IMG/VR virus record: IMGVR_UViG_3300046167_000825 | Coordinates: 62,001-126,000 of that record | Direction: 5' to 3' (one strand) | Length of the DNA: 64,000 bases | Part shown: piece by piece, positions 1 through 40,886 of the stretch | How positions within the stretch are numbered: position 1 is the first letter of the stretch | Layout: each line of letters opens with the position of its first letter | Notes under the pieces: generated by a model | Databases searched by the model: none | Told to the model about the DNA's origin: nothing | Seen by the model: the letters and a program-made list of their open reading frames with translations, nothing else | Program-made: the position numbers and the translations under genes

Positions 1-1121
1 AACACTTTTAGGGTTTTGGGGACAGTGGTATTGAGATTGCTGTTATTTAGAGTCATATTGGAAGCACCCACTGTGTTTTTGATGCTCCCCGTTGTGACTG
101 AGTTCGTGATTTTACCATTCCCTAAGATTCTTTGACGGAAAGACCCACCCGTCTTGATTGTTTTGGTTTGTCTCCCAGCGAGAATATTATATTCGTCTAT
201 GTTGGCAGTGGGGGATGGGATAGTTGTCGTGAGAGATGTTTCACGGAGAGGATAGTTGCTCGGCAAACCGTCCTTTGGCCCACTGAAAGAGGTCTGCTCT
301 TGTCCCGTCACAATCTTATTGACGGTCTTCGAGTTGACAGACACTTGGTCAGTGTTCACCTCGAAGGTGTCTTTAGGGGAAACAGCGAACTTGGAGAGTT
401 CAGTGAAGACCACACCATTGGTCGCTGAGAAAACAATGGATTCATTACTAGAAATCCCTACATTTCTAGTGCCTTGTATTAGAACGGACAGTGGCAGATT
501 GTCTGGATCATCGAACTGGGAGGGTTCATTGATAAGCCCCTCGCCTTTAATTTCGATTCCAGAATCTTGTGCAATGAGAGAAACCCCGACATTCTTTTCA
601 CCATTGCCTCCCGCTTGCACTTGGAAAGCACCCTCACTCTTTGAGAGGAAAGACACTTTCTGAGAGTTGCTCCCTAGTTCGATTTGAATACCACTCCCAA
701 AGCGAACTTCAGCAGCGAAGTCTTTATCGCCATTTCTTCGACCAGTGACATTGAGAAAGGCTCTCCCGTTTTTCCCTACTGCAAACATATACGGTGTGGG
801 ATCGATATTGGGTTTTTCGATAGGGGGTGTAATCCTCGTCAAATAAGCGAGATGCTCTGATATATCCTTTTTGGAGGCATCTATAAGTGTGGGTTTCGGA
901 AAGATTTTGGCTGTGAGAGGTTTCCCATAGAGGTCTGGGTCGCTCCTATCATTTGAGATGACCGTCCCCATAACTTGTTCAATGAAGGGCATTTCGGTTT
1001 CGGGATCAACGCCCACATCTGTCTGTTCTGACATTGGGAGTGTGCCATCACTCGTGTGAGTCAATTCAATGCGATGTTCGGTGAGGTTTTCTTCCAGTTC
1101 GTTGTTGATTCGGTAAAAGAT
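1..1121 (-). CDS. C-terminal continuation of the baseplate gene in a shifted frame (partial, runs off the window)
   Basis: Manual translation gives an uninterrupted frame from 1121 to the window edge (IFYRINNELEENLTEHRIELTHTSDG...NTTVPKTLKV). It is not in the ORF track because it has no stop. Confidence 0.7.
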   Translation of the reverse strand, partial: MFYRINNELEENLTEHRIELTHTSDGTLPMSEQTDVGVDPETEMPFIEQVMGTVISNDRSDPDLYGKPLTAKIFPKPTLIDASKKDISEHLAYLTRITPPIEKPNIDPTPYMFAVGKNGRAFLNVTGRRNGDKDFAAEVRFGSGIQIELGSNSQKVSFLSKSEGAFQVQAGGNGEKNVGVSLIAQDSGIEIKGEGLINEPSQFDDPDNLPLSVLIQGTRNVGISSNESIVFSATNGVVFTELSKFAVSPKDTFEVNTDQVSVNSKTVNKIVTGQEQTSFSGPKDGLPSNYPLRETSLTTTIPSPTANIDEYNILAGRQTKTIKTGGSFRQRILGNGKITNSVTTGSIKNTVGASNMTLNNSNLNTTVPKTLKV

Positions 1122-9851: not shown

Positions 9852-9860
9852 GAGTACAAC

Positions 9861-10598: not shown

Positions 10599-10622
10599 AC
10601 ATTGACTAGACGATTTTCCAAC

Positions 10623-10656
10623 AGCCTCCCGTCAATTCTGTGGGAGGCTTTTTTTT
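10623..10656 (+). terminator. Intrinsic terminator
   Basis: agcctccc / gggaggct stem followed by T-run. Confidence 0.7.
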
Positions 10657-10667
10657 AGAGGTATGAA

Positions 10668-11249
10668 ATGAAGATATTGTGGTTTGACCTAGAAACAACT
10701 GGCTTAGACAAAGACACCAACACCATCCTTGAGATAGGGATTGTCGTTACGGACATGGAGGGGAATGTTTTGAGTGCTTGGGACACCAAGATTAAACCCA
10801 CACCCAACGACATAGCACGGGCATCAAAACGAGCCTTGGAGATTAACGGCTACACCACAAAAGGGTGGGAGGATGCTCCAACTCCAGAGGAAATTGCCCC
10901 CATCATTCGTGAGAAGTTCAATGGGAAATATATTCTCGGTGGTCATAATGTCGCTCACTTTGACGTACCCTTTCTGAAAGCGTGGTTGAAGAAACACAAC
11001 CAAGACCCCAACATTGGATATAGATTTTTAGACACCATGAGTACGGCAGTCGAACATCTTTTCCCTTGTGGGCTGAAATCAGCCTCCCTTGTCAATATCC
11101 GAAAGGCATTGAATATTGAAACGGGGAAAGCACACACTGCTCTTGCTGACACACTCGCTTGTGCTGAGGCATACCGTCAAATGGCTCGTTCCTCTCTTAT
11201 CAAACGACTATGGTGGTCGTATGTCATCCCCAAGAGGATGAAGCAATAA
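10668..11249 (+). CDS. DEDDh 3'-5' exonuclease (DnaQ-like)
   Basis: FDLETTGL (ExoI), GHNVAHFDVPFL (ExoII), HTALADT (ExoIII). Confidence 0.9.
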   Translation: MKILWFDLETTGLDKDTNTILEIGIVVTDMEGNVLSAWDTKIKPTPNDIARASKRALEINGYTTKGWEDAPTPEEIAPIIREKFNGKYILGGHNVAHFDVPFLKAWLKKHNQDPNIGYRFLDTMSTAVEHLFPCGLKSASLVNIRKALNIETGKAHTALADTLACAEAYRQMARSSLIKRLWWSYVIPKRMKQ

Positions 11250-11289
11250 ACTGTCTATTCTCAACTATCATTGAACTGGATTGTATTCA

Positions 11290-12732: not shown

Positions 12733-14771
12733 TATATGAAACAACCCCCAGACCCCCTTCGGATAGAAAAGGGTTTACGATAACATCCTTGAAAGACCTC
12801 TTTCATTTGGTTGATAAATACCCAACCAAAGAACCGTATATCATTGCTTGGGAATATGTTTTCATGGACTATTCTTGGGTTTGGATACATCCGAGAGTGT
12901 TGAAAGAAAGTAAACACATGCCAGAGTTCTGGATTCAGTTGGAGGACTGGAGAACAAAGGGCAATCTAGTTCGGTCAGATAACAAAAGTTGGGGTGATAA
13001 AAAGAAAAAATATGCCAAATTAACACAGCCCGTTGATGCAAAGAACTCGGAGGCACTTCGTTTTCCGAAGATTCTTGGAAGGGGTGTTCTTTCAATTGCT
13101 TATGGGACTTCACCAGAGAAAGCAGAACTCTTTAAGAAAAAATGTCTTGCTATCATAAAACGCTTTCAAGGGGATGATTCCCTCGCAGATATTAACGATC
13201 TGTACCCCCGAAAGATGAAGGTCACGGTTAGCGTTATCGAAACCTCTGAGAAATGGGTTATCAACTACGCAGAAGGAGTCCTAGAGATCAATGCTAGTGC
13301 GTTCTTGGGGCAGAGCCTTTCAAGGCAACAGATGCTGTTGTTGAGAGGATTCGGTTTGGCTTATTTCTCTTTGAAACTACGCCCGTCTGATATGAAGAAA
13401 TGGTTCAAGTATTACCGAGTCAAAAAACCCATTGCCAACCGTAAGTTCTATCACCCAGACATCACAAAACTTCAGATAAGTTGGGCAAGTGGTTTGGCTG
13501 ACTTCGTGTTGGGTGAAGAAACCTCTGTGATGAAGACCTTCAGAGAGTACTTCCAGAGAACCTCCGTTGGGGCTAGTCGGGTTGACCTCTCTCAGTTCCC
13601 AACTGAAATGGCTAGTTCGGTGATGGCATCTAGTATTGAACTAGCCGAACCCTTCAAAAACACTCCGTTTCAGAACCTTGAAACCAATGATATCCTAGAT
13701 ATTATGGGTTTGAGCGATGCTGCCGTTGCCACTCCCACTTTACTGGGAGGTTTGACGGGTGCTAATAAAGTGGTTGCCACTGACAACACCTTCAGAGATA
13801 TTGTGGCATACTCCATAGAAACCGATGAGGGGGGTAATGCTGAATGGGATCTTGGTGAGGGTAAAGCCGTATCAATTGCTAGAACCATTTGGTACAACAA
13901 GAAGACGGGTGTGTCTGCCATAGAGAATGACCTTTTTGAACTAGATGAGTCTTTTCAAGGGAAAGGTATTGGGGTTCGGATGGTTTCAAATCAGATAGAT
14001 ATGTGTCTAGCGAAGGGCATTCAAAAAATCATGTGCTATGCCGCAAGAGGTGATGATGAATATGTGGGCTACAAGGTGTGGCACAAAATGGGTTATGATG
14101 CCCTCCTAACTCCCAAGAATCTTGATGAGCACTCCGATGATGAAGATGGTTTCTATTGGTGGGTCTTGAAATCCCTAGAAAAGAAAATAAATGAATACCC
14201 CGAAGATATCTTGCACCGAGAAGTGGATCTTCTCTTACAAAAAGCCGTGGGGTCAAAGAAACCCAGTTATTTCAGAAGCCTCCCCACCCCATTCTTTTCT
14301 CGTTATATGAACATTCGCTTTGAAGAACCACCCTTTGCCAATGATTGGTCAGACCTCGTGCCGACTTTATCCAGAGCAGAGATTTTTCAATACTATTCTT
14401 TCTTGAGTGCTCAAATGAGTAAAGGTGACATCGTCAGTTTCAATCTGTTCAAAGACTTAGAACTCAGTATCACGAAAGACACCATACAAAATCTTATGGA
14501 TGTTGAAGGTTTTGAGGATTGGTGGGGTGAGAACGGTGGTGGATATAAAGCCACTCTTGATTTGAGTGAGGGTGTCAATAGCCCCGCTTATATGATTCTC
14601 TCTTTATACCGTCAAAAGAAGGGCTTGACAAAGATGTCCTCAGACGATCTATTGACTAAGGCAATGGGGTATCTTTCATCGAAAGACATCGCCCTCTTTG
14701 ATGAGGCTCGGAGAGAACTCCGTGTGGCTTCAAAATCTGTTTCTCGCATCGCCACTCTTTGGCTTGCATAA
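12729..14771 (+). CDS. GNAT-like domain protein, paralogue 2
   Basis: FELDESFQGKGIG, GYKVWHKMGYDA, LMDVEGFEDWW...ATLDLS. ATG 12729 overlaps the upstream TGA. Confidence 0.6.
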   Translation: MIYETTPRPPSDRKGFTITSLKDLFHLVDKYPTKEPYIIAWEYVFMDYSWVWIHPRVLKESKHMPEFWIQLEDWRTKGNLVRSDNKSWGDKKKKYAKLTQPVDAKNSEALRFPKILGRGVLSIAYGTSPEKAELFKKKCLAIIKRFQGDDSLADINDLYPRKMKVTVSVIETSEKWVINYAEGVLEINASAFLGQSLSRQQMLLLRGFGLAYFSLKLRPSDMKKWFKYYRVKKPIANRKFYHPDITKLQISWASGLADFVLGEETSVMKTFREYFQRTSVGASRVDLSQFPTEMASSVMASSIELAEPFKNTPFQNLETNDILDIMGLSDAAVATPTLLGGLTGANKVVATDNTFRDIVAYSIETDEGGNAEWDLGEGKAVSIARTIWYNKKTGVSAIENDLFELDESFQGKGIGVRMVSNQIDMCLAKGIQKIMCYAARGDDEYVGYKVWHKMGYDALLTPKNLDEHSDDEDGFYWWVLKSLEKKINEYPEDILHREVDLLLQKAVGSKKPSYFRSLPTPFFSRYMNIRFEEPPFANDWSDLVPTLSRAEIFQYYSFLSAQMSKGDIVSFNLFKDLELSITKDTIQNLMDVEGFEDWWGENGGGYKATLDLSEGVNSPAYMILSLYRQKKGLTKMSSDDLLTKAMGYLSSKDIALFDEARRELRVASKSVSRIATLWLA

Positions 14772-14818
14772 TTTATCTATATCTCTATTTATGTGATGAC
14801 TTTTATTAGGAGTATTCT

Positions 14819-17140
14819 ATGAAAAAACAAGCAAAACTCTCTCGGATTCCAGCAGAGGATGAAACTTCAATCGGTGTCCCTATGAAGTTTTTGGGGAAGC
14901 CTTACACAGTTACAGCCCCAGAAAGCCAAATGGATGAGATATCTATGTTGTGGGCGAACTGGAAACCCTCCATGACAATGTTGAATAAAAATAGTCTTTC
15001 ATACAAGACAGTCCCGAAGTTCAAACGGGGTGTTCGGAACTTGATGAGTAAGAACAGTTTTATGCTCTCTATGTCAGATGAGAAATGGGTTTTCAACTGG
15101 TCATTGGCTCAACAGACTCTCGAAATCAATGTCCAAGCGAAAATGTCGAAAGCGAAAATCAGACGATTGGCTGCCTTTGCTTTTGGGATTATGATGTATG
15201 ACACGGGCCTCAAGCCAAAATCTCGAATCTTTTTCAAGCGTAAAATCAAGAGAGAGAAGCCCCCATTACAAGGTATCCAAAAATATCTCGGTTTCTTGAA
15301 AGACGGTATGGCGTTGGGTCGTGCAAGAGCCGCTTTCGCTTTCGGCTTTATGATGCACTTGGAACAAGTCAGTAAAAAGTTTTTTGGTCATCCCCTCCAT
15401 GCAATGGTGGGAGAGGTCTTCTTCGACAAAAACAACTTTGTTGTTGATGAAGAAACACAATACACCCGCTTTGAGATAGATGAAGAAAGTCCTCTTGGTT
15501 ATGAGTTTGACTCAGAGCGTTTTGACCTTGTTTATAAAGGGAAATCAGAAAGTCAGATTGCTGCAATGAAACGGGTTACTGTTGCTGGGATGGATTATGA
15601 AACAGCCCTAGATTCTACTGGGATTGCCCCCTTCACAAACGCTTTGAAAAAATATATCACCAATGCCGTGAATGACCCTCAGAGCCGAAAACACTCTGAA
15701 GTTCTTAGGGGTTTAGGATTAGGTCAGTCTTCTCAGTTTGATCCCAACAAGTTCGAGTTACGGCTTAATGTTGGTTCAAGTAGTATAGGCTTTCGTCTTA
15801 CTTATAATGGCAGACATTGTTGTAACGGGTCTCGTAGTCAAATGACAAAAAACACACACTACAACGCTTTGTGTGAAGTGTCTAGTTCTTTTCAAGGATT
15901 GGGTGCTGGGATGCACATGTCGGCTTCTCAGATTGAACACGCAATGAAAACGGGTAAGAAGAAGATTAAGGTTTCTGCCGCTTTGGATGGTGGTTGGAGA
16001 ACTTGGAACAAGTTCGGTTTTGAGTCCAATAACCCAGTTATGGGTATAGTCAATGGTGCAAAAAGTTGGTGTGAGAAGTCTGTCGATGCCAAAATCTACG
16101 AGATGGGTTATGTAGATCGTCAACAAGTGATGACGGATCTCATGGTGGGTATGGTTCAACAACTCGGGGGGGCTTCTGCCTTCAGTGGTGCAAGCACGAC
16201 TCAAACTGGCCCCGTTACTCCAGTATTACCTTCAGATTCAAATGCAGATATTGCAGAAATCTTGAAGGAAGTGATTGATACCTCTGGTTCGTATTCGGGA
16301 GCGATGAAAAGGATGCTTCAAGCCGCTGGACTCCCACCAACGGCAAACAAAAGACATATAACCACTTGGTTTGCTGGTAATACCGTCACAGTGGCTCAAC
16401 AACAGAAAGTACATGATTATTTCACTTCGGGTAGTTCTGGCTTTGAAGATAAGTTCCGTAGATTGCGTGGTTATCCTCCTCGTGCGGGGCAATCAAGATC
16501 AAATGTTAATACCTCTCAAATGAACTCAGATATCAAAGGGTTAATAGAGTCTTTTGGTTGGTTTGGTGGTGAAGCCTTTAACGGCACATCCGTTCTTAAC
16601 CTCATCAAATCTCCTCAGTTCGATGTTGTTTTTGGTTATGATAACTTGCCTAAAATTGTGGCGTTCTTCCGTTCTAAAAACTATGAGGATCAAGTTCCAG
16701 CACTCACGAAAGCAAAACTCACTCCTAGAACACAGTACATGCAAGATTGTATGGAACTAGAGGGTTTCTCAAAGTGGTGGTCAGAGGGTGGTGGTCGCAA
16801 TTGGAGTGGAACACTTGACCTCACAGACGGGAAATACTCTATTGCTGTTTTGGCGATGGATCATTATCGAAAAATGAAAGTTCAAAACAAGCCCGATGTT
16901 TATGCAGAGGATTCAGCCTTTCAGCGTGCTCGTGTTGCAAGTGACATGACTTCTATTATTGATGCTGATATCCTTGAGAACTTTGTCAATATACCAGAAT
17001 CTGAAGAATGTGGTGGTGGTCTTCTTCGTATGGATATTGCTTTGATGGAACAAGCAACTCGTAATGCTCGTCTTGAAAAGAAGGACTTGGAAAAAGGTGG
17101 TCTTGTTCGTGTTGCTTCTCGTTGGTTGGGTGGAGAGTAA
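14819..17140 (+). CDS. GNAT-like domain protein, paralogue 3
   Basis: CEVSSSFQGLGAG, GGWRTWNKFGFES, CMELEGFSKWW...GTLDLT. AGGAG RBS. Confidence 0.6.
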   Translation: MKKQAKLSRIPAEDETSIGVPMKFLGKPYTVTAPESQMDEISMLWANWKPSMTMLNKNSLSYKTVPKFKRGVRNLMSKNSFMLSMSDEKWVFNWSLAQQTLEINVQAKMSKAKIRRLAAFAFGIMMYDTGLKPKSRIFFKRKIKREKPPLQGIQKYLGFLKDGMALGRARAAFAFGFMMHLEQVSKKFFGHPLHAMVGEVFFDKNNFVVDEETQYTRFEIDEESPLGYEFDSERFDLVYKGKSESQIAAMKRVTVAGMDYETALDSTGIAPFTNALKKYITNAVNDPQSRKHSEVLRGLGLGQSSQFDPNKFELRLNVGSSSIGFRLTYNGRHCCNGSRSQMTKNTHYNALCEVSSSFQGLGAGMHMSASQIEHAMKTGKKKIKVSAALDGGWRTWNKFGFESNNPVMGIVNGAKSWCEKSVDAKIYEMGYVDRQQVMTDLMVGMVQQLGGASAFSGASTTQTGPVTPVLPSDSNADIAEILKEVIDTSGSYSGAMKRMLQAAGLPPTANKRHITTWFAGNTVTVAQQQKVHDYFTSGSSGFEDKFRRLRGYPPRAGQSRSNVNTSQMNSDIKGLIESFGWFGGEAFNGTSVLNLIKSPQFDVVFGYDNLPKIVAFFRSKNYEDQVPALTKAKLTPRTQYMQDCMELEGFSKWWSEGGGRNWSGTLDLTDGKYSIAVLAMDHYRKMKVQNKPDVYAEDSAFQRARVASDMTSIIDADILENFVNIPESEECGGGLLRMDIALMEQATRNARLEKKDLEKGGLVRVASRWLGGE

Positions 17141-17188
17141 TGAAGAGCCTCGTTTCTCGCATTGCTTCTCGGCACATGGGTGATGAAG

Positions 17189-17217
17189 GGATCGCTTTCA
17201 ATAGGACTTTCCGTATA
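17189..17217 (+). promoter_or_regulatory. Bipartite promoter motif GGATCG-N15-TCCGTATA
   Basis: Exact consensus, 30 nt before ATG 17248. Confidence 0.75.
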
Positions 17218-17247
17218 AGAGTTGCACACCAACTTGAGGAGAGAACT

Positions 17248-17724
17248 ATGACAGCATCCTTCACCCCCGTGACTGAGTTACAACCGAGAAAGAAATGGCG
17301 TAAGAAAATCATTTACGCTGGGTTGTTCCTTGATGACACCACTAGAGCCAACTTGGTTCGGTGGTGGAATCAACAAGAAGGGACAGAAGCACTCCACGAA
17401 AAACAGATTGTCCACCACCTCACTATGGTTTTTAAGCCCTCTCAAGAAGATGTTGAGAATATGCCATTGGGTAAGATCGTGAAGATGTCCGTCATTGGCT
17501 ATGGTCAAGACGATAAAGCCCAAGCCCTTTTCGTTAAAATTGAGGGAGGGGTTCGGTCACAGAACACTAAACCTCATATCACGATGGCTATCTCTTCAAG
17601 TGGTTCTGCAAAGAACTCCAATGACTTGGACATTATCCCTTTAACGGGGCCGACCTTTGAGGGTATCTTTGGATACAGTGGTAAAGGGAAGGATTATCAA
17701 CAAATTGCTTGGGAATCCGAATAA
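17248..17724 (+). CDS. 2H phosphoesterase (a longer in-frame start at 17140 is possible)
   Basis: Two HxT motifs (HHLTMVF, PHITMA). GAGGAG RBS before 17248. Confidence 0.7.
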   Translation: MTASFTPVTELQPRKKWRKKIIYAGLFLDDTTRANLVRWWNQQEGTEALHEKQIVHHLTMVFKPSQEDVENMPLGKIVKMSVIGYGQDDKAQALFVKIEGGVRSQNTKPHITMAISSSGSAKNSNDLDIIPLTGPTFEGIFGYSGKGKDYQQIAWESE

Positions 17725-17741
17725 ATATTGAGAGGATAGGT

Positions 17742-18053
17742 ATGATGGAACAGACTTTACAAGGAGTTTCTATCATGCTTCCCCCTTCTTCGGTATCCAC
17801 TACCATCGACAATTACATCTGGGATCTCGCCCAGCACCAACCACTCATAGACGACTTGGAGAAAAACCTTCAAGTGATCTGTTTGTTTCACCCCGAAAGA
17901 GAAATCCTTTATCTGATAGATGATTATTACCATCTACCCGTAGCAATAAAGAAAATCACAACTAACCCTAGAGAAGACATCCAAGAACTAGCGTATCTTT
18001 GGTTCTCTCTCATACAACTAGCACGAGGACGATATGCCACAATCACTGCTTGA
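17742..18053 (+). CDS. Hypothetical protein
   Basis: GAGG RBS, tiles with neighbours. Confidence 0.55.
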   Translation: MMEQTLQGVSIMLPPSSVSTTIDNYIWDLAQHQPLIDDLEKNLQVICLFHPEREILYLIDDYYHLPVAIKKITTNPREDIQELAYLWFSLIQLARGRYATITA

Positions 18054-18321
18054 CAGAATGGATTACACACAACTTAAAAGCCTTGCTGAGTCACGAGGGT
18101 GCTTACCCGAAGAACCTCATAACAGTGAAGAGATACGAAAAGCCATCCACGATTGGGAGATGGATCGTGGCTTACCCTTCAAGGGTTTGAGAGAGATTGC
18201 CACGAAAAATACCGAGAACACTACCAACTTGAGTGAGGTCTTACAAGCCCTTTCTGAGTTACAGACAACGGTCAATGAAGTCAATGACCGATTGAAACGA
18301 TTAGAGAACAAACATGCGTAG
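18034..18321 (+). CDS. Hypothetical protein with C-terminal coiled coil
   Basis: LSEVLQALSELQTTVNEVNDRLKRLE heptads. Confidence 0.55.
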   Translation: MPQSLLDRMDYTQLKSLAESRGCLPEEPHNSEEIRKAIHDWEMDRGLPFKGLREIATKNTENTTNLSEVLQALSELQTTVNEVNDRLKRLENKHA

Positions 18322-18430
18322 ATTTCTGAAACACAAAATGAAGTACGTTTTCTTAGGGGTTGTCATCACGACAGTCATCGGTGCTTCAATGATAAAGGTG
18401 ACTCTCAAGCCTACTCGGAGTTATGTATGA
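18314..18430 (+). CDS. Small single-TM protein (38 aa, not in the ORF track)
   Basis: MRRFLKHKMKYVFLGVVITTVIGASMIKVTLKPTRSYV fills the gap and overlaps the next ATG. Confidence 0.4.
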   Translation: MRRFLKHKMKYVFLGVVITTVIGASMIKVTLKPTRSYV

Positions 18431-19152
18431 AACTTATCTCTTTTAGGGGTGTGCGAACTACAAGTGATTTGAAGCAAGCCCTAGATTCTTTAGAGGCTCG
18501 TCTAGCGAAAGTCGGGGGAGTCCATTTGAAGATATCCTCTAGTGATGTTTCTCCTTTAGGTGGGTTGGGTCGTGAGATTCGTATGAACCTTGAGGGTGAC
18601 CACACCAAAGAGGAATTGATGTGCCTCTTATGGGGGAACGCCATACCTTGTGGGTTCACACCCATCGACCGTTATCCCAACTTGAACACCGACACGAAAA
18701 ATGTATTTCATTTTTATGGTGCTTGGCAGATATTGCTGGATAATCATTTGAAAGAAGGGCAAGGAGAGTTTGCTTTTTCATCCCTCGTCTGTGCTTGTCA
18801 GTGCGAACTAGGTGTGTGGGAGGGTGGTCGTGCCATAGAGAGAGCGATACAAGCCCATCTACACCGTCTTGGTTATTCTGTGGGTGCTATCACTGGTTCT
18901 ATCTCTGAACTAGACTTGAGGGCTTTCAATGCGTTGGGTTTGTCTAGCCTCCCTCTCGAAACCATTTTGAAAAGACTCACTTCATTTGAGAAGCCGAAGC
19001 CTAGCCCACAAGAAACCCAGACGGGACATCTTGTTTTACCCGATATTGAACATCAAGTGTATTCGTATGGTAATGTGGCAACGACTCAGACCACGAATGG
19101 TGCTTTGATTACAAAACGAGGCTACGGTAGGATAATTATAGATTTTCCTTGA
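18427..19152 (+). CDS. Hypothetical protein
   Basis: 241 aa ORF with ATGA coupling. Confidence 0.6.
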   Translation: MKLISFRGVRTTSDLKQALDSLEARLAKVGGVHLKISSSDVSPLGGLGREIRMNLEGDHTKEELMCLLWGNAIPCGFTPIDRYPNLNTDTKNVFHFYGAWQILLDNHLKEGQGEFAFSSLVCACQCELGVWEGGRAIERAIQAHLHRLGYSVGAITGSISELDLRAFNALGLSSLPLETILKRLTSFEKPKPSPQETQTGHLVLPDIEHQVYSYGNVATTQTTNGALITKRGYGRIIIDFP

Positions 19153-24760: not shown

Positions 24761-25354
24761 ATGACTATACTATCCATAAATCAAGGGGATTGCTTGGAGC
24801 ATTTGACAACGATGCCAGACGGTTCTGTTGACAGTGTATTGTGTGATCCACCCTATGGGTTGAAGTTCTTCTCACACAACGGTGGGTTTGATAACATAGG
24901 GAACGCCACCCAACAGAAAGAATGGCATCGTGAATGGGTGACACACGCATATCGGCTGTTGAAACCCAACGGTGTTATCAAAGCCTTTTCTAGTCCACGA
25001 ACTCTGCACCATCTGTTGGCGATAATGGTGGAGATCGGCTTTGAGGTGTCCGTAGATTCTTGGTTGTATGTGTCTGGGCGACCAAAGACCATTGATGTGG
25101 CAAAGAGTATTACGGCTTACGAACTAACGGGTTCTTCCTATCAAGGGAAGTTCCACGAACTATCCAAAGGACACAAGAGGTCGAAACTAGACATAGACGA
25201 CTATGTGAATCGAGGGAAGTTCTTCACAAAGGGGCATCAAGAAACCCTAGATTTTGAACTAACCGAGAACGGTCAGAAATGGGATGGATGGCAGTACGGA
25301 TTGAAACCAGCATTTGAACCAATAATTATGGGCTATAAAGGAGCAAAACAATGA
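24761..25354 (+). CDS. N4/N6 DNA methyltransferase, N-terminal catalytic module only (N1)
   Basis: GDCLE, CDPPY, RLLKPNG, YVSGRPK, LKPAFEP. Stops without an FxGxG motif. Confidence 0.8.
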   Translation: MTILSINQGDCLEHLTTMPDGSVDSVLCDPPYGLKFFSHNGGFDNIGNATQQKEWHREWVTHAYRLLKPNGVIKAFSSPRTLHHLLAIMVEIGFEVSVDSWLYVSGRPKTIDVAKSITAYELTGSSYQGKFHELSKGHKRSKLDIDDYVNRGKFFTKGHQETLDFELTENGQKWDGWQYGLKPAFEPIIMGYKGAKQ

Positions 25355-27261
25355 CAACATTAACACTAATGAATGGCGATTGTGTCGCCAAGATGAAAGA
25401 GATGGCAGACGAATCTGTGGATGCTGTTCTGTGTGACCCCCCGTACGGACTGAAGTTCATGAACAAGGATTTCGATGATTTGGGTGAGGGGAAACAACAG
25501 AGAGAGTGGCATGTCCAATGGGTGAAAGAAGCCTTTCGAGTTCTGAAACCGAATGGGGTTATGAAAGCCTTTGGGGGAACTAGAACCTACCAACATCTTC
25601 TTGCAGCAATGGCAGAAGTGGGATTCTCTGTTGACCTTTCTGTCTGGGCATACGGATGTCTATCGGAAGACACCGAAATACTTACGGGCGAAGGGTGGGT
25701 TGAACAATCAAAACTCAATAATGGTTCTATGGTTGTGTCCTATTGTATAGACAAGGACACTTATCAAGTGCAAGCCGTTGAGGAGGTAGTTCGATATGAA
25801 TACAAGGATACCGCTTACAGAATACAATCAGATCATACAGACCAAATCGTGTCCCGAAACCATCGTTGCATTGTTGAACGAGAGGGAGAAAGAACTTTTC
25901 TTTTCGCAGAACACTTGCAAGCAAACGAAGTCGTACCCTTTGTGGAGAGTGTGTCGATACGAGGGTTGCGAAACGATCTTTCAAACGGATACAACACGGC
26001 ACGGGCTAAGAAAGAAACTCTGTTCGACCATTCGAGCACACTATCCGACAAAGACTTGCAAGGGGTGTCACAAGGAGTTTCAAACCAGAGAGAAAACAAC
26101 AAAGTATTGTTCGAGGGCATGTCGACCACCTACATGGGTGACGAAAGTATGCAAGGGGTGCAACAAAGAGTTTCAAACAAAGAGATCCTCACAGACTTGG
26201 TGCAAGCGAGAATGTATGACACTGCCGAAGATCACAAAAGAGTGTCAAGGTTGTGGGAAAGAGTTTCAAGTACCAGATGGGAAAGTGGGGCGAGCAAGGT
26301 TGTATTGCAAGCAAGAATGTCAGAGGAAACCAAAGGTGGAATTGACTTGTTATGTCTGCCAAAAGGTGATCCTAGTGAGAGCAAGAAGATTAGAGCGAGC
26401 AAAAAATCCAACTTGTTCAAGGCAGTGCAACGGAGTTCTGAGGGGCGAGGAATGGAAAGCACACGCTCACAAGGGGCGGGCGAACTGGTCACAAGAGAGC
26501 GAACAAGCCTTAGTGGAGAGAATGACGGGAAGCACCAACCCAGCGTGGAAGGGTGGGGTGACCTATCGCAATCGCAAGGGGAACTACATAACTCAGAGTA
26601 TCGCTTATGTGAGATGCCCAACCGAGTACACCTCAATGGCGAGGAAAGACGGGTATGTGATGGAACATCGTTTGAAAGTGGCACAAGCAGTTGGCAGACC
26701 ACTGACGAGAACCGAATGTGTTCATCACATCAATCACAACGCAGAGGACAATCGGTTGGAGAACTTGATGTTGTTCAAGAACAATCGGGATCACAAACTG
26801 TACGAAGCACATGGGAAACCCGAACCACTTTGGCAACCGTCACCCCAATAGAGTACGAGGGCATTGTATGGTGTGTGAAAGTACCAACGGGTGCTTTTGT
26901 CGCTAGACGGAATGGCAAGGTCTTTGTTACGGGGAACTCTGGCTTCCCAAAATCCCTGAATATAAGTAAGAAACTGGACTCAAGACATAAAGCCCGAACG
27001 GGTGAGGAAGGGGCTATCATTGGTTTCACGAAAGGAGTTGGTGGCGAGAACATCAATGATATCGTGGCTGGTAAAGAAGTGCGAACCACAGATGAAGAAG
27101 GTGGCAAAGGTGTGGGTGCTTACGGTACGGGTGCGAAGCAAGTAGCCGTTGATGTTCCCGTCAGAGAGTGGGTCACAGACGAAGCGAAGACTTGGGAAGG
27201 CTGGGGCACGTCTTTGAAGCCAGCCTTTGAGCCAGTGTGTGTAGGATACAAAAGAGTATGA
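25351..27261 (+). CDS. N4/N6 DNA methyltransferase N-terminal module (N2) containing an intein
   Basis: GDCVA, CDPPY, RVLKPNG, AYG|CLSEDTEILT...VFVTGN|SGFPKS, LKPAFEP. No FxGxG motif. Confidence 0.85.
   Translation: MTTLTLMNGDCVAKMKEMADESVDAVLCDPPYGLKFMNKDFDDLGEGKQQREWHVQWVKEAFRVLKPNGVMKAFGGTRTYQHLLAAMAEVGFSVDLSVWAYGCLSEDTEILTGEGWVEQSKLNNGSMVVSYCIDKDTYQVQAVEEVVRYEYKDTAYRIQSDHTDQIVSRNHRCIVEREGERTFLFAEHLQANEVVPFVESVSIRGLRNDLSNGYNTARAKKETLFDHSSTLSDKDLQGVSQGVSNQRENNKVLFEGMSTTYMGDESMQGVQQRVSNKEILTDLVQARMYDTAEDHKRVSRLWERVSSTRWESGASKVVLQARMSEETKGGIDLLCLPKGDPSESKKIRASKKSNLFKAVQRSSEGRGMESTRSQGAGELVTRERTSLSGENDGKHQPSVEGWGDLSQSQGELHNSEYRLCEMPNRVHLNGEERRVCDGTSFESGTSSWQTTDENRMCSSHQSQRRGQSVGELDVVQEQSGSQTVRSTWETRTTLATVTPIEYEGIVWCVKVPTGAFVARRNGKVFVTGNSGFPKSLNISKKLDSRHKARTGEEGAIIGFTKGVGGENINDIVAGKEVRTTDEEGGKGVGAYGTGAKQVAVDVPVREWVTDEAKTWEGWGTSLKPAFEPVCVGYKRV
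25781..25787 (+). promoter_or_regulatory. Internal Shine-Dalgarno AGGAGGT for the nested HNH ORF
   Basis: 8 nt before ATG 25796, encoded within intein codons. Confidence 0.7.
25796..26851 (+). CDS. HNH homing endonuclease with four CxxC...CxxxC Zn repeats, overprinted inside the intein in a different frame
   Basis: GYVMEHRL...VHHINHNAEDNRLENL (HNH_3-like), NPAWKGG, repeated CKGC.KEFQ...CSRAC, own RBS. Confidence 0.88.
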   Translation: MNTRIPLTEYNQIIQTKSCPETIVALLNEREKELFFSQNTCKQTKSYPLWRVCRYEGCETIFQTDTTRHGLRKKLCSTIRAHYPTKTCKGCHKEFQTREKTTKYCSRACRPPTWVTKVCKGCNKEFQTKRSSQTWCKRECMTLPKITKECQGCGKEFQVPDGKVGRARLYCKQECQRKPKVELTCYVCQKVILVRARRLERAKNPTCSRQCNGVLRGEEWKAHAHKGRANWSQESEQALVERMTGSTNPAWKGGVTYRNRKGNYITQSIAYVRCPTEYTSMARKDGYVMEHRLKVAQAVGRPLTRTECVHHINHNAEDNRLENLMLFKNNRDHKLYEAHGKPEPLWQPSPQ

Positions 27262-27329: not shown

Positions 27330-27941
27330 ATGGATTGTGTGTGTAAGGGCTGTGGGAAAGACTTTCGTGTTTCTCCCAGTGTTATCCGAAAGGGTGGTGG
27401 TAAGTATTGTTCAAGGGCTTGCACGAAAAAAGGTGAGAACCGAGAGTGTCCTACATGTGGTTCGCAGTTTTATGTCAAGAACGCAGAAATCAAGAGGGGC
27501 TATGGCACATACTGTTCGAGAGAGTGTGCCAACCCAGCACGAGGATTGAGTGGTGAAAACCATCCTCAATGGAAGGGTGGTAAGTACAAGCATGGTGACG
27601 GTTATATAATGGTGCGTGTAGGCACGGATAAATACGAACTAGAGCATCGTGTAGTGATGGCGAACCATTTGGGTCGGGAACTGAAAACCCACGAGCATGT
27701 TCATCACATCAATGGTGTGAAGGATGACAACCGTATAGAGAATCTTGAACTGACTACGGCAAGCCAGCACACGAAAGAGCATCACGCTCCCAAGAAGGAT
27801 TTATCGACTTGGATGGCAGTCGCTTGTTTGAGTTGTGGGAATGTCTTCGCTGAACGGAAGAAAAAGGTAGAGAGAAACCCGAACTGTTTTTGCAACAGAG
27901 ATTGTTATATCGCTGGCAAGAAAAAGAGAGTTGTGCAATGA
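27330..27941 (+). CDS. Free-standing HNH endonuclease with Zn-ribbon repeats
   Basis: AAGGAG RBS before ATG 27330. HPQWKGG, LEHRVVM...HVHHINGVKDDNRIENL. Confidence 0.88.
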   Translation: MDCVCKGCGKDFRVSPSVIRKGGGKYCSRACTKKGENRECPTCGSQFYVKNAEIKRGYGTYCSRECANPARGLSGENHPQWKGGKYKHGDGYIMVRVGTDKYELEHRVVMANHLGRELKTHEHVHHINGVKDDNRIENLELTTASQHTKEHHAPKKDLSTWMAVACLSCGNVFAERKKKVERNPNCFCNRDCYIAGKKKRVVQ

Positions 27942-28225
27942 ACAAGTGTAATAAATGTGGGAAAGAATTGAGTATGTATTATGTGACGGTGGGCGTGATG
28001 GGGAACTTCTGTGGAACAGAGTGCCTAGAAGCCTACCGAACTTATTTACAGAAACAAACTGAACAGAATGCCTACAAGAATCTTTGCAAACTGATTTATG
28101 CAATGAATAGAGTGATGCTCTCCCAAGACCCTTCCGAAAAGGATGTCATCTTCATAAAGAGGGTAGAAGCAGAGGTTTTGAATATGAAAGACTGGATCAC
28201 ACAACTAGCAAAAGTAGAGCAATGA
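27938..28225 (+). CDS. Small Zn-finger protein
   Basis: CNKC...FCGTEC, ATGA coupling. Confidence 0.55.
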   Translation: MNKCNKCGKELSMYYVTVGVMGNFCGTECLEAYRTYLQKQTEQNAYKNLCKLIYAMNRVMLSQDPSEKDVIFIKRVEAEVLNMKDWITQLAKVEQ

Positions 28226-28285: not shown

Positions 28286-29980
28286 ATGACAATACTAAAA
28301 TTAATGAAAGGCGATTGCCTCGAAAAAATGAAGAACCTTGAAAGTTCTTCTGTCCCCTCTATCTTATGCGACCCACCTTACGGCTTGGAGTTCATCACTG
28401 AACTAGAAGGGAAATCACGGAACTTGATGAACCCCACTAGCGAAGCAGATATCAAACGGAAAGAAGACTATGGGAACTCGTACGCTGGGCGTGCCTCCAA
28501 CCTTCCCGATTTGGGTAAGTTCGGACAGTATGGGAAAGGGGTACAAGAGTGGCACAAGGGTTGGGTTGGGGCTTGTCATAGGGTATTGTCAGAAGACGGC
28601 TCGTTGATGGCTTTCAATTCCAGCAAGACCTCTCACCGAATGATAGCCGCTATGGTCGAACTAGGGTTTCACATTTCTATTGATGCTTGGGTATATCTGT
28701 CTGGGATGCCCAAAGCACGAGACTTAGGGGCTGGTGTAGGTTGGTATACAAACTTGAAGCCCTCTTATGAACCTATCATTGTGTGCCGAAAACAAAAAGG
28801 AGAAACTATGCACAAATCACATTTAATTTATATCGGACGGAAGCCTTTGAGCGAGAGGAACATCGCAGAGAATGTTTTGAAGCACGGGACGGGTGCGATG
28901 AACATTGATGCTTGTCGAATAGGTGACGAGGAGCGAACTTACACGGGAAGTGGTGAATCTCAAATGAGATACAATGACGACCGTGCTGGTTTGGCAGATG
29001 GGAGAGGAAAAGAACTTGAGTTCACGGTAAAAGGTCGATGGCCCGCAAACTCTATCTTCTCTAGTTCATGTGCCAAGATTCTTACAAAGCAGATTGGGGC
29101 AGAGGCTTCCACTTATTTTTTCATTTCTGAGGATCGTTTTGATAACCACAATTCGTATAACAACAACAAGGAGAACACTATGAATGTACCATCAGATTTA
29201 TTAGACTATTTACACACGATGATTACCCCCACACATGTGGGAGGGGAAAGTCTCATCATCCAAGAGGGCTTGAACGATCACGACTTCAGCCAATACACCG
29301 ACAATCAATGGCACGGTTGTATCGCTGTTGGAACACCGACAGAGGAAACAAGCAAGGAACTTATGAGAGTCATGAAGGCTGGTGCTCATTTGATGTTGAT
29401 AGCCCCCGAAGAAGAACCCACTGGTTATAAGGGTGCTTGTCAGATTGAGGACACGGGATTTGAAATCAGAGATTCTATATTTTGGGCGAGAGAAACCGAC
29501 CCAGAGAATCCCAACTTCATGTACATGCCAAAGGCTTCACGGAGTGAGAGAGAACTAGGCACAGAGCATTTGAAAAAAGTCAGTGGTGCTGAAGCCGTTG
29601 ATCGGAAAGAAGGTTCTGCTGGGATGGACAACCCCCGTGCTGGTGCTGGTAGAACAGCCACAGAGATTGGTAATTTTCATCCGACTGTCAAGCCCATTGG
29701 GATTATGGAATGGTTGGCTCGTGATGTACCAAAAGGTGCGACAGTTCTAGACCCATTTATGGGTTCTGGCACTATGGGTATCGCTTGTGTGAAGACGGGA
29801 CACTCTTATATAGGCACAGAGATTGACGAGAGTTACTTCCCTATTGCAGATGCTCGTATCCGTCATTGGAATGAAACCTATTGTGCTTGGGATAGTGCTG
29901 AGGTCATTTCTGACCTAGATGAGGAAGAGACAGAGGATGTCCTAGCCCCTATCGACTTGAACAGTTTCTTGGGTTTTTAG
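28286..29980 (+). CDS. Beta-class N4/N6 DNA methyltransferase: N module (N3) + middle module + C module
   Basis: CDPPY, YLSGMPK, IGRKPL...NIDACRI...GRWPAN, HPTVKP, DPFMGSG. In-frame AAGGAG+ATG at 28808 and 29180. Confidence 0.85.
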   Translation: MTILKLMKGDCLEKMKNLESSSVPSILCDPPYGLEFITELEGKSRNLMNPTSEADIKRKEDYGNSYAGRASNLPDLGKFGQYGKGVQEWHKGWVGACHRVLSEDGSLMAFNSSKTSHRMIAAMVELGFHISIDAWVYLSGMPKARDLGAGVGWYTNLKPSYEPIIVCRKQKGETMHKSHLIYIGRKPLSERNIAENVLKHGTGAMNIDACRIGDEERTYTGSGESQMRYNDDRAGLADGRGKELEFTVKGRWPANSIFSSSCAKILTKQIGAEASTYFFISEDRFDNHNSYNNNKENTMNVPSDLLDYLHTMITPTHVGGESLIIQEGLNDHDFSQYTDNQWHGCIAVGTPTEETSKELMRVMKAGAHLMLIAPEEEPTGYKGACQIEDTGFEIRDSIFWARETDPENPNFMYMPKASRSERELGTEHLKKVSGAEAVDRKEGSAGMDNPRAGAGRTATEIGNFHPTVKPIGIMEWLARDVPKGATVLDPFMGSGTMGIACVKTGHSYIGTEIDESYFPIADARIRHWNETYCAWDSAEVISDLDEEETEDVLAPIDLNSFLGF

Positions 29981-36909: not shown

Positions 36910-37112
36910 TGAAAATCACAGAGGGAAATAGACGGATAAGAGATGCAAGAATATCTTATAAAGGGAGAGGGGGTGTGATTCTACGAGCGAGAGTCGGGAG
37001 AAAGCCCACACCCATAATGGCAGAGATACAGTTCCAGTTTGGGGATAGAGAAACGCACGATATCTCTGAGGCTTATTGGGACACAGAGAAAAAACTTTGG
37101 GTGGTGGGATGA
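36909..37112 (+). CDS. Hypothetical protein
   Basis: TAATG coupling. Confidence 0.5.
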   Translation: MKITEGNRRIRDARISYKGRGGVILRARVGRKPTPIMAEIQFQFGDRETHDISEAYWDTEKKLWVVG

Positions 37113-37537
37113 TTATTACAATAGGAAGAAAGCCTTTTAAGGGTGCAGTCATAGACAATGTCATGAAGAATCACTGTGGGGGGATCAACATAGACCCTTG
37201 TCGGATTACCTTTCAGACAGACGGGGTGCGAAAAGAAACCAAGCGAACCCCAAGAGATGACACAGCCGTATGGACTGACAAGAACAGTGGTATGAAGAAA
37301 GAGAACTCTTTGTATGCCGATGCCGACCCACGAGGTCGCTTCCCCGCCAATGTTCTGTTCTCAGAGAGTGTTACCCACCACTTACCCAAAGCGACACAAG
37401 GTCACTGGGCTAATGCGAAGGTCACGGGCTATGGTGATCGTATCGGTTCGGGGACAGTTGAATATCCTGATGTTGGTGAAAAAGATCAAAGTGGTGGCTC
37501 GGTAGCAAAATACTTCTTCATTTTGCGAGGTGTTTGA
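37109..37537 (+). CDS. Stand-alone methyltransferase middle module (M2)
   Basis: MIITIGRKPF...NV...GGINIDPCRI...GRFPANV...SVAKYF aligns with the middle of the 28286 ORF. No DPPY or FxGxG motif. Confidence 0.75.
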   Translation: MIITIGRKPFKGAVIDNVMKNHCGGINIDPCRITFQTDGVRKETKRTPRDDTAVWTDKNSGMKKENSLYADADPRGRFPANVLFSESVTHHLPKATQGHWANAKVTGYGDRIGSGTVEYPDVGEKDQSGGSVAKYFFILRGV

Positions 37538-40574: not shown

Positions 40575-40886
40575 ATGATTATCACAATAGGTAGGAAGCC
40601 TTTCAAGGGTGCAGTAGTGGACAATGTGAAAGACAACGCTTGTGGTGGGTTAAACATCAATGAAACCCGTATTGGAACAGAGGGAGGTCGAACCAACAAA
40701 GGGGGCTATCAAGATTCTTTTGTGGGAGGCACAGTGGATTACAAAACCTCTGGGGTTGAAACCGATCTCACACCGAAAGGGAGATGGGCTGCGAATGTGA
40801 TAATCAATACTGCTTCTTCTCGGGCTTTAGATGAACAAAGTGGGGGTACTGTTGCAAGCAGATATTTCAAAAAGGTGGGCAAATGA
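40575..40886 (+). CDS. Stand-alone methyltransferase middle module (M3)
   Basis: MIITIGRKPFKGAVVDNV...GGLNINETRI...GRWAANV...VASRYFKKV. Confidence 0.75.
   Translation: MIITIGRKPFKGAVVDNVKDNACGGLNINETRIGTEGGRTNKGGYQDSFVGGTVDYKTSGVETDLTPKGRWAANVIINTASSRALDEQSGGTVASRYFKKVGK

What the first reader, a model, noticed from the sequence alone, without database searches (positions are those of the whole stretch)
28286..29980. MTase ORF with internal RBS+ATG at both module junctions and a duplicated degenerate catalytic half
Seen: in-frame AAGGAG+ATG at 28808 and 29180, exactly at the module borders. The N1/N2 junction has the same aaggag...atg layout but with a stop. The C-module begins PSDLLDYLHTMITP (a copy of the KPxxLMxYL helix), then DNQWHGCIAVGTP / LMRVMKAGAHL / IEDTGFEIRDSIFW (motifs IV-VIII without DPPY), before the intact FxGxG. 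Established: permutation by duplication is the proposed route to MTase circular permutation. Inference: this is an intermediate of that process.
Basis: partly seen in the sequence, partly recalled or inferred. Interest (0 to 1): 0.6.

Follow-up and report, generated by a model that had tools for sequence, protein, structure and literature searches.

The report
Fused piece of a split phage methyltransferase
This marine jumbo-phage gene joins three modules of a DNA methyltransferase that relatives, and this genome elsewhere, encode as separate genes; it keeps their ribosome-binding sites and start codons inside the reading frame, and it carries an old, conserved, catalytically dead copy of the catalytic half that probably docks exchangeable catalytic halves.

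Summary
AAGGAG+ATG lies in frame at 28808 and 29180, exactly at module borders. Residues 353-405 are a real but degenerate copy of the catalytic half (hhalign 97%, E 1e-10).

This is not a transient permutation intermediate. The dead copy is an old domain, found in 73 of the 79 aligned homologues, with dN/dS about 0.05. The intact DPPY and FxGxG motifs sit on the outer halves, and AlphaFold pairs those halves into a normal beta-class fold.

The internal starts mark gene borders. Relatives have genes that begin exactly at each internal ATG. The AAGGAG before the second ATG is kept in seven lineages, once in a different codon phase.

The same 289-kb genome also encodes two free N-halves and two free middle modules, but only one SAM-binding core. 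An unrelated GC-rich phage has 6 + 6 + 1. A predicted N-half + middle + core complex scores 0.90 against 0.50 for the best control.

Best reading: this is a secondary fusion within a split, modular beta-class methyltransferase system. Its internal starts probably still supply free core subunit. I found no published description of such a system.

The parts
28286..29980 (+). Fused ORF, 564 aa: N-half, middle module, insert, C-half. A beta-class amino-methyltransferase (Pfam PF01555).
28286..28807 (+). N-module (aa 1-174): motifs IV-VIII, with DPPY at nt 28370-28381. It ends with the strand KPSYEPIIVCRK. It is a paralogue of the two free N-half genes.
28797..28810 (+). Junction 1: AAGGAG (28797-28802) plus in-frame ATG 28808. 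This corresponds to the start of the mid-insert-C genes of relatives (P0010; P0011, P0013 and P0014 begin within a few residues of it).
28808..29179 (+). Middle module (aa 175-298), the TRD-like part: IGRKPL, GTGAMNID, GRWPAN, YFF. The last 16 codons are a neutrally evolving linker.
29168..29182 (+). Junction 2: AAGGAG (29168-29173) plus in-frame ATG 29180. This is the start of the insert-C gene in relative L012. The hexamer is conserved in 7 of 7 lineages.
29180..29512 (+). Insert (aa 299-409): a degenerate N-half-like mini-Rossmann domain (helix, strand, IV* = VGTP, alphaD to beta7*). It has no DPPY and no FxGxG. It is the most conserved part of the protein.
29513..29977 (+). C-half (aa 410-564): FMYMPKASRSER, HPTVKP (nt 29678-29695), FMGSG (nt 29756-29770), motifs II-III and an acidic tail. 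This is the SAM-binding half.
24761..25354 (+). Free-standing N-half gene N0 (197 aa, DPPY, ends KPAFEPIIMGYK). AAGGAG lies in its last codons and its stop overlaps the next ATG.
25351..27261 (+). Second free N-half gene (P0002), interrupted by a 427-aa intein (nt 25657-26937).
37109..37537 (+). Free-standing middle module mid-a (142 aa; starts MIITIGRKPF, ends KYFFILRGV).
40575..40886 (+). Free-standing middle module mid-b (103 aa; starts MIITIGRKPF, ends SRYFKKVGK).

Best explanation
The ORF is a secondary gene fusion inside a split, modular beta-class (N6-adenine / N4-cytosine) DNA methyltransferase system of marine jumbo phages.

The system has three kinds of part:
- N-halves: motifs IV-VIII with the catalytic DPPY.
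- Middle modules: the target-recognition part, with GTGxLNID and GRWPAN.
- One core: an old, catalytically dead N-half-like domain (the 'insert') followed by the SAM-binding half (HPTVKP, FxGSG).

In the folded enzyme, a real N-half completes the Rossmann sheet of the core. Its beta4/DPPY strand lies next to the core's beta1/FxGSG strand. The insert packs against the edge of the N-half (alphaE, beta6, beta7) as a built-in pseudo-partner. Inference: it acts as a docking platform.

The two internal AAGGAG+ATG pairs are the retained start sites of the former mid-insert-C and insert-C genes. The one at 29180 most likely still initiates translation. One ORF would then yield the full 564-aa enzyme and free 266-aa core (and possibly a 390-aa form). 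The free core is needed by the two other N-halves and two other middle modules encoded in the same genome.

Shown: the homology, the borders, split and fused relatives, conservation of the SD motif, purifying selection, and the module census. Inferred: assembly in trans, use of the internal starts, and different specificities for different N/middle sets.
For: 1. Gene borders.
- P0010 begins at the junction-1 Met; P0011, P0013 and P0014 begin within a few residues of it. P0012 begins exactly at the junction-2 Met.
- In L012 an out-of-frame deletion removed the N and middle modules. The core gene stays intact from that ATG, at 95-96% aa identity and dN/dS 0.057.

2. SD conservation.
- AAGGAG precedes the junction-2 ATG in 7 of 7 lineages, although the linker around it evolves neutrally.
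- In L013 the hexamer lies in another codon phase (K-G-D instead of K-E).
- Chance that six K-E pairs all use AAG-GAG, given the local codon usage: about 7e-5.
- 40 of 73 family members have a Met within 8 residues before the insert helix, mostly preceded by G/E/D-rich residues.
- Junction 1 keeps AAGGAG+ATG in all three fused genes read at DNA level.

3. Fold.
- Full-length AF2 model: pTM 0.81. CcrM and M.RsrI match at Z 19-20, rmsd 3.2-4.0, 214-220 residues aligned over model range 1..537-543.
- C-module alone: it splits into a mini-Rossmann (residues 299-411) and a bare SAM-binding half.

4. Census.
- The 289-kb record holds 3 N-halves, 3 middle modules, 1 insert and 1 matching C-half.
- L020, a GC-rich phage with 45% identity, has 1 insert-C + 6 N + 6 middle modules as separate genes.
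- L013, L017 and L018 have arrays of 2-6 N-halves and up to 5 middle modules.
- In IMG/VR the insert was seen only in loci with free modules. 66 of the 80 IMG/VR loci carry N-mid-C on one ORF without the insert.

5. Free modules are under purifying selection: pN/pS 0.10-0.25 for N-halves and 0.25 for the mid-a orthologue.

6. Predicted complex of N0 + mid-b + core: score 0.90, best of 3 controls 0.50. The mark was reached by 51 of 78 solved complexes and by 2 of 108 mismatched pairs. Runs agree in at least 81% of contacts; partner pLDDT is at least 72.
- N0 residues 22-31 contact core 484-493.
- Insert 378-401 and 410-416 contact N0 79-105 and 173-185.

7. The N fusion is derived. Five of the six N-fused proteins (the sixth, P0119, lies elsewhere in the tree) sit in a shallow clade (SH-aLRT 99) nested among 62 mid-insert-C proteins. 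The fused protein also keeps both copies of the junction strand (EPIIVCRK and HLIYIGRKP), where canonical enzymes have one.
Against: - There is no protein-level or ribosome-profiling evidence for internal initiation.
- The RNA-library contigs over the region cannot show transcript or translation starts. They could also be DNA carry-over.
- The complex prediction reassembles pieces of a fold solved many times, so its pass may come from memory of the monomer (the tool's own caveat).
- N:middle ratios are not always 1:1 (L018 4:5; L013 2:5 within the loci read). A simple one-N-one-middle pairing rule is therefore not established.
- 33 of 73 family members lack a Met at junction 2, so internal initiation is not universal.
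- I had no model coordinates. The insert's position rests on aligned ranges and on the contact list of the complex job.
- The tree root is a midpoint, and the 8-member clade is unresolved.
Confidence: 0.58

Rival explanations
1. The gene is an evolutionary intermediate of circular permutation by duplication. A tandem duplicate of a beta-class methyltransferase is being trimmed towards a new motif order, with the internal starts as the future N-termini.
For: - Part of the N-half is duplicated inside the protein.
- The inner unit has the non-permuted order: helix, beta1*, beta4*-beta7*. It folds as a small Rossmann-like domain in the model.
- An in-frame start sits exactly at its beginning.
- The permutation-by-duplication model predicts such duplicated intermediates and cites DNA methyltransferases as documented examples (PMC3320104).
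Against: - The inner unit lacks DPPY, FxGxG and beta2-beta3.
- The outer halves carry the intact motifs and form the active fold.
- The architecture is old and widespread and is under strong purifying selection.
- No examined relative ends after motif VIII*.
- The motif-X copy is not detectable by sequence.
- The internal starts coincide with gene borders of a split system.
- The insert could equally derive from capture of one of the many free N-half genes rather than from a whole-gene tandem duplication.
Confidence: 0.1
2. The fusion is real, but the internal SD+ATG pairs are silent relics. Only the full-length protein is made. The free N-halves and middle modules either use full-length P0001 as a partner or do something else.
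For: - The N fusion is recent, so junction 1 could be a leftover.
- There is no direct evidence of internal initiation.
- 33 of 73 family members have no Met at junction 2.
Against: - The junction-2 hexamer survives saturated synonymous divergence (pS 0.5-0.8) in a linker whose codons otherwise drift. In L013 it is kept in another codon phase.
- Both internal sites are better SD matches than the ORF's own start.
- In L012 the same ATG is the only start of an intact, conserved core gene.
Confidence: 0.22
3. P0001 is the only working methyltransferase of this family in the genome. The free N-half and middle ORFs are decaying fragments left by duplication and homing-endonuclease traffic. The insert is a neutral structural decoration.
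For: - Homing elements crowd the locus: an intein with a nested HNH, and a free HNH gene.
- L012 shows that deletions do occur here.
Against: - The free N-halves and middle modules keep intact frames, DPPY and their terminal strands across lineages with saturated synonymous change. pN/pS is 0.10-0.25.
- The same split layout recurs in a distant GC-rich phage.
- An intein sits in a conserved motif of a free N-half. This is typical of functional host proteins (own knowledge).
- The insert has dN/dS about 0.05.
Confidence: 0.07
4. The internal AAGGAG motifs act as translational pause sites at domain borders, aiding co-translational folding. They are not start sites.
For: Both motifs lie just before module borders in disordered linkers (pLDDT below 50 at residues 289-297).
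Against: - Each motif is followed at ideal spacing by an in-frame ATG, and relatives' genes begin at those ATGs.
- SD-induced pausing is itself disputed (own knowledge).
Confidence: 0.03

Closest known systems
Beta-class amino-methyltransferases (CcrM, M.RsrI, M.PvuII, Mod of EcoP15I; Pfam PF01555 N6_N4_Mtase)
   Same: - Motif order IV (DPPY) ... TRD ... X, I (FxGSG).
- Pfam score 94.5 bits, well above the cutoff.
- Sequence hits to CcrM and M.BceJIV.
- AF2 model superposes at Z 18-20.
   Different: - A roughly 110-residue dead N-half-like domain is inserted between the TRD and the SAM-binding half.
- Relatives and paralogues encode the N-half, TRD and core as separate genes.
- There are in-frame internal start sites.
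Naturally two-subunit C5 methyltransferases M.AquI and M.EcoHK31I
   Same: One Rossmann-fold DNA methyltransferase is divided between separately encoded polypeptides that must assemble (PMC3404938).
   Different: - Those are C5 enzymes with one fixed pair of subunits.
- Here it is a beta-class amino-methyltransferase cut at two other places.
- It has arrays of 3-6 alternative N-halves and TRD modules and a single shared core.
- It has an extra pseudo-domain.
METTL3-METTL14 and ciliate MTA1-MTA9: an active subunit paired with a degenerate beta-class subunit
   Same: An active methyltransferase fold works beside a catalytically dead paralogous fold. Beta-class enzymes are held to need a dimer with division of labour (PMC7544214). 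These structures also appear among the fold matches at Z about 9-10.
   Different: The dead unit here is half-sized, lies inside the same polypeptide as the SAM-binding half, and is predicted to contact the edge of the N-half. Whether it replaces a second protomer has not been tested.
Type I HsdM/HsdS and multispecific phage C5 methyltransferases (SPR, phi3T) (own knowledge)
   Same: One catalytic/SAM machinery is combined with several exchangeable recognition modules to cover several target sequences.
   Different: In those systems the Rossmann fold itself is not split. Here the catalytic half of the fold is one of the exchangeable parts.
Duplicated intermediates of methyltransferase circular permutation (Jeltsch 1999, as cited in PMC3320104)
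   Same: There is an internal repeat of methyltransferase segments, and the central part has the alternative motif order.
   Different: The central unit is degenerate and old, the outer halves are the active ones, and no trimmed, permuted descendant was found.

Membership tests
Beta-class N6A/N4C DNA methyltransferase (PF01555) | Profile match above the curated threshold | tested here: met
   94.5 bits against a cutoff of 26.7, E 1.2e-26
Beta-class N6A/N4C DNA methyltransferase (PF01555) | Motif IV (D/N/S)PP(Y/F) lies N-terminal to motif I FxGxG | tested here: met
   DPPY at aa 29-32 and FMGSG at aa 491-495
Beta-class N6A/N4C DNA methyltransferase (PF01555) | Seven-stranded Rossmann fold built from the N-terminal and C-terminal segments | tested here: met
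   AF2 model against CcrM, M.RsrI and M.PvuII: Z 17.5-20, 214-232 residues aligned, model range 1..537-547. This is a prediction, not a solved structure.
Beta-class N6A/N4C DNA methyltransferase (PF01555) | SAM-dependent methylation of DNA adenine N6 or cytosine N4 | not testable with these tools
   Needs an enzyme assay or methylome sequencing.
Permutation-by-duplication intermediate | Two full tandem copies of the domain, every motif present twice | tested here: not met
   Only alphaD-beta6 is significantly repeated. The motif X/I copy is not significant. Motifs II-III and the TRD are not repeated.
Permutation-by-duplication intermediate | The central unit is a complete, potentially functional permuted enzyme | tested here: not met
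   VGTP stands in place of DPPY, and there is no glycine loop. The fold is only a small Rossmann-like domain, Z 6.5-8.7.
Permutation-by-duplication intermediate | Transitional state: relatives exist that are trimmed at one or both ends towards the permuted order | tested here: not met
   Relatives that start at the inner unit all keep the C-half. None of the examined homologues ends after VIII*. The architecture is old and under purifying selection.
Naturally split (multi-polypeptide) DNA methyltransferase | Parts of one catalytic fold are encoded by separate genes | tested here: met
   Free N-half and middle-module genes occur in this genome and in L012, L013, L017, L018 and L020.
Naturally split (multi-polypeptide) DNA methyltransferase | The polypeptides associate and are jointly required for activity | tested here: inconclusive
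   The predicted complex scores 0.90 against 0.50 for the best control, with beta4 against beta1. There is no biochemical test.
Nested in-frame isoforms by internal translation initiation | SD plus start codon in frame inside the ORF, conserved beyond what the coding sequence requires | tested here: met
Nested in-frame isoforms by internal translation initiation | The shorter products are actually made | not testable with these tools
   Needs a western blot, N-terminal proteomics or retapamulin ribosome profiling. Read laying gave contigs only.

The most novel reading that the evidence does not exclude
These phages carry a combinatorial, multi-specific methyltransferase. A single SAM-binding core has a fossil N-half that serves as a permanent docking surface. 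The core accepts any of 3-6 exchangeable catalytic halves together with 3-6 exchangeable recognition modules. One core gene then supports many target specificities against host restriction systems. Internal initiation in the fused gene tunes the supply of free core.
Probability: 0.4. Interest if true: 0.8.

Novelty: new variant of a known kind. Interest (0 to 1): 0.64.

Why it matters
- DNA methyltransferases are usually read as one gene, one enzyme, one specificity. If the Rossmann fold itself is split here into swappable catalytic halves and recognition modules around one shared SAM-binding core, phages have a compact way to build many specificities. Annotation pipelines that score the 100-250-aa pieces as fragments, or leave them unscored, would be missing working enzymes.
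- It would be a natural example of fragment complementation, with a built-in pseudo-partner. That is relevant to engineered split methyltransferases.
- It is a well-dated case of gene fission and fusion that leaves functional start sites inside an ORF.
- For the permutation question, it shows that a duplicated layout can be a stable end state rather than a way-station.

Tried and rejected
- Direct BLASTP of aa 1-298 against 299-564 found no significant repeat (E 0.067). The repeat only appears through third-party sequences and profiles.
- Pfam on the isolated insert is weak (E 0.2). Pfam on aa 290-345 finds nothing. hhalign of the insert against the C-half profile is not significant. I therefore do not accept the motif-X copy on sequence grounds.
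- I considered the linear Pfam reading, in which IV*-VIII plus X-I form one dead methyltransferase domain and the DPPY half is left orphaned. I rejected it for three reasons. The full model aligns to solved enzymes from residue 1 to about 540. The C-module alone does not form a whole beta-class fold; its best beta-class matches cover only residues 95-246 at Z about 7. The complex places the N-half's beta4 against beta1.
- A nucleotide search of the phage collection found no close relative. The nearest polymerase is 46% identical, in an unannotated 485-kb uncultured phage.
Module counts for L013, L017 and L018 therefore cover only the fetched flanks.
- Five literature searches found no description of split or modular beta-class methyltransferases in phages. 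This covers the held library only.
- Read laying returned contigs only. It shows that the fused frame is present in independent samples, but it gives no information on RNA ends.
- The large representative-protein search was not used. The word search and family scans had already settled the family.
- Only genetic code 11 was used.
- Read laying was given 2,201 letters.
Full report
WHAT IS THERE

The window is bases 62001-126000 of a 289-kb virus record (CheckV completeness 66%), a marine jumbo phage. The ORF 28286-29980 (+) encodes 564 aa. Pfam PF01555 (N6_N4_Mtase) matches twice. Residues 26-171 match the first half of the profile and carry DPPY. Residues 352-521 match profile positions 32-219; they lack DPPY and carry FMGSG. 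AAGGAG+ATG lies in frame at 28808 (codon 175) and at 29180 (codon 299).

This signal is specific to gene starts in this genome. Of 14 AAGGAG-N4-8-ATG sites on the + strand, 12 are at gene starts. The only two deep inside an ORF are these two. Both are better Shine-Dalgarno matches than the ORF's own start. Contigs from independent seawater metagenomes cross both junctions with no stop and only 3-nt indels, so the fused frame is not an assembly artefact.

ANATOMY AGAINST ORDINARY RELATIVES

Single-unit phage enzymes align to aa 1-265 and to aa 403-527. The examples used were Mycobacterium phage PattyP gp61 and Klebsiella phage Chronis gp34. They also align a second time to aa 350-400 (E 2e-8). 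The protein is therefore a canonical beta-class enzyme (N-half, TRD-like middle, SAM-binding C-half) with about 110 extra residues (299-409). The insert sits between the YFF strand that ends the middle module and the FMYMPKAS strand that starts the C-half.

Profile-profile comparison confirms that the insert contains a copy of alphaD-beta6 of the N-half (97% probability, E 1.2e-10). Its motif IV position reads VGTP. The proposed copy of the motif-X helix at the start of the insert is not detectable by sequence.

FOLD

The full-length AlphaFold model has pTM 0.81. It superposes on CcrM, M.RsrI, M.PvuII and EcoP15I Mod at Z 17.5-20, with 214-232 residues aligned across model residues 1 to about 540. 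The DPPY half and the FxGSG half therefore build the normal fold together, and the insert is a separate domain.

Modelled alone, the C-module (pLDDT 85) falls into two parts. Residues 299-411 resemble small class-I Rossmann methyltransferases in the non-permuted order (TrmI, PrmA, Trm11; Z 6.5-8.7). A bare SAM-binding half resembles the C-halves of beta-class enzymes (Z about 7). No coordinates were available to me, so domain packing is inferred from aligned ranges and from the contact list.

THE INTERNAL STARTS ARE GENE BORDERS

- Fused forms (N-mid-insert-C): P0004-P0008, at 69-83% identity.
- Mid-insert-C proteins: P0010 begins at the junction-1 Met; P0011, P0013 and P0014 begin within a few residues of it.
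- P0012 begins exactly at the junction-2 Met.
- In L012 (core 95-96% identical) an out-of-frame deletion removed the sequence from LCDP of the N-half to GRWPA of the middle module. It left an 86-aa remnant whose stop overlaps the junction-2 ATG. The core gene behind it is intact.

The AAGGAG before that ATG is conserved in all seven lineages read at DNA level. In L013 it sits in a different codon phase (K-G-D rather than K-E). The 16 codons before it evolve about neutrally. The chance of AAG-GAG six times from codon usage alone is about 7e-5. Across the wider family, 40 of 73 proteins have a Met in the last 8 residues before the insert, usually after G/E/D-rich residues.

Junction 1 keeps AAGGAG+ATG in the three fused genes read. 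The fused protein also keeps both copies of the border strand (EPIIVCRK, then HLIYIGRKP), where canonical enzymes have one. On a tree of core sequences, five of the six N-fused forms occupy one shallow clade (SH-aLRT 99) nested among 62 mid-insert-C proteins, and the sixth (P0119) lies elsewhere. The N fusion is therefore derived (midpoint root, clade unresolved inside).

A SPLIT, MODULAR SYSTEM

HMMs for the four modules were run on the whole record. They find three N-halves: 24761-25354, 25351-27261 (with an intein), and the one in this ORF. They find three middle modules: 37109-37537, 40575-40886, and the one here. They find one insert and one matching C-half.

| Locus | Module arrangement |
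|---|---|
| Window genome (289 kb) | 3 N-halves, 3 middle modules, 1 insert, 1 C-half |
| L017 | Five free N-halves before the fused gene |
| L018 | Three free N-halves and four free middle modules |
| L013 | Two N-halves, three free middle modules in tandem directly before the mid-insert-C gene, and one more after it |
| L020 (GC-rich phage contig, 45% identity) | One insert-C gene followed by six N-halves and six middle modules, all separate |

Every N-half ends with the KPxxEPxxxGxK strand. Every middle module begins MI(I/V)(T/N)(I/V)xRKP and ends with the (R/K)(F/Y)F strand. Among the 80 IMG/VR loci fetched with the core, 66 carry N-mid-C on one ORF without an insert. In that set the insert was seen only in loci with free modules. 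Of the 73 insert-bearing proteins in alignment A1, only six carry a DPPY half in cis; P0006, which was not aligned, is a seventh.

The free modules are under purifying selection (pN/pS 0.10-0.25). So is the insert (dN/dS about 0.05), which is more conserved than the N-half (0.14).

ASSEMBLY

A predicted complex of the core (aa 299-564), mid-b and N0 scored 0.90, against 0.50 for the best of 3 controls. That mark was reached by 51 of 78 solved complexes and by 2 of 108 mismatched pairs. The runs agree in at least 81% of contacts, and the partner's pLDDT is at least 72.

The contacts are the expected ones. N0 residues 22-31 (beta4, DPPY) lie against core 484-493 (beta1, FMGSG). The insert (378-401) and the FMY strand (410-416) lie against alphaE, beta6 and beta7 of N0. 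The GRWAAN segment of the middle module lies against the last strand of N0. Because the pieces belong to a fold solved many times, this shows complementarity. It does not show binding.

INTERPRETATION

The reading as a permutation intermediate is not. The duplicated inner unit is dead, old and conserved. The outer halves are the enzyme. No trimmed descendant was found.

A tandem duplication remains a possible remote origin of the insert. Capture of one of the many free N-half genes is an equally good origin.

The better-supported account is a secondary fusion within a split, modular methyltransferase system. The start site at 29180 is probably retained by selection because free core is needed by the other N/middle sets. 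Beta-class enzymes are thought to need a partner subunit, sometimes a dead one (PMC7544214). The insert may be such a partner built into the core, but this is inference.

Naturally split methyltransferases are known only as fixed two-subunit C5 enzymes (PMC3404938). I found no description of the present arrangement in the held literature.

LIMITS

- There are no protein or ribosome data.
- No model coordinates were available.
- Module counts in metagenome relatives cover only the fetched flanks.
- RNA-library contigs over 29430-29749 do not prove transcription.

Noticed in passing
window 25351-27261 (intein 25657-26937; nested ORF 25796-26851): The second free N-half gene is interrupted at WAYG|SGFPKS by a 427-aa intein that its orthologues in L012 and L017 lack. 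Inside the intein, in the +1 frame, lies a 351-aa HNH endonuclease ORF with repeated CxxC fingers (Pfam HNH_3, E 1.4e-6). Two frames stay open together for about 1 kb. This looks like a homing endonuclease nested out of frame in an intein.
   Followed up: partly
window 27330-27941; loose ends at 27928 in runs X5 and X6: A free-standing HNH endonuclease gene sits between the N-half genes and the fused gene, where relative L012 has a C5 methyltransferase. Contigs from two independent seawater samples diverge from the window just upstream of 27928. The HNH gene therefore appears to be polymorphic in the population.
   Followed up: partly
window 28307-28332 (run X6): Metagenome contigs match the first 15 or so codons of the fused gene and then run on into unlike sequence. 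Another contig starts matching at 28307. This suggests recombination or alternative N-modules joined at the conserved GDCxExM start.
   Followed up: no
P0006, P0012; L012:6001-7884: Close relatives carry a Hint-type intein (with a homing-endonuclease-sized insert) inside the HP|TVKP motif of the SAM-binding half. The window's copy has none.
   Followed up: no
L012:5744-6004: An 86-aa remnant ORF marks an out-of-frame deletion of most of the N-half and middle module in a phage whose core gene is otherwise 95-96% identical to the window's.
   Followed up: yes
L020:5400-9557 and 9569-18707: The GC-rich relative has a DnaB helicase gene with two inteins directly upstream of its array of one core, six N-halves and six middle modules. 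Its core protein has a 150-residue low-complexity Pro/Glu/Thr-rich N-terminal extension.
   Followed up: partly
window 27938-28225: A small conserved zinc-finger ORF (zf-FCS-like, E 2e-4) always lies just upstream of the core-bearing gene in this phage group: window, L012, L017, L018 and, in a divergent form, L016. Its function is unknown.
   Followed up: no
G000:C1:168459-169136 and 141036-141806 (outside the window): Two further small, apparently complete methyltransferase genes lie outside the window. One (218 aa) has DIPY and HPTEKN motifs. They do not belong to the split family.
   Followed up: partly
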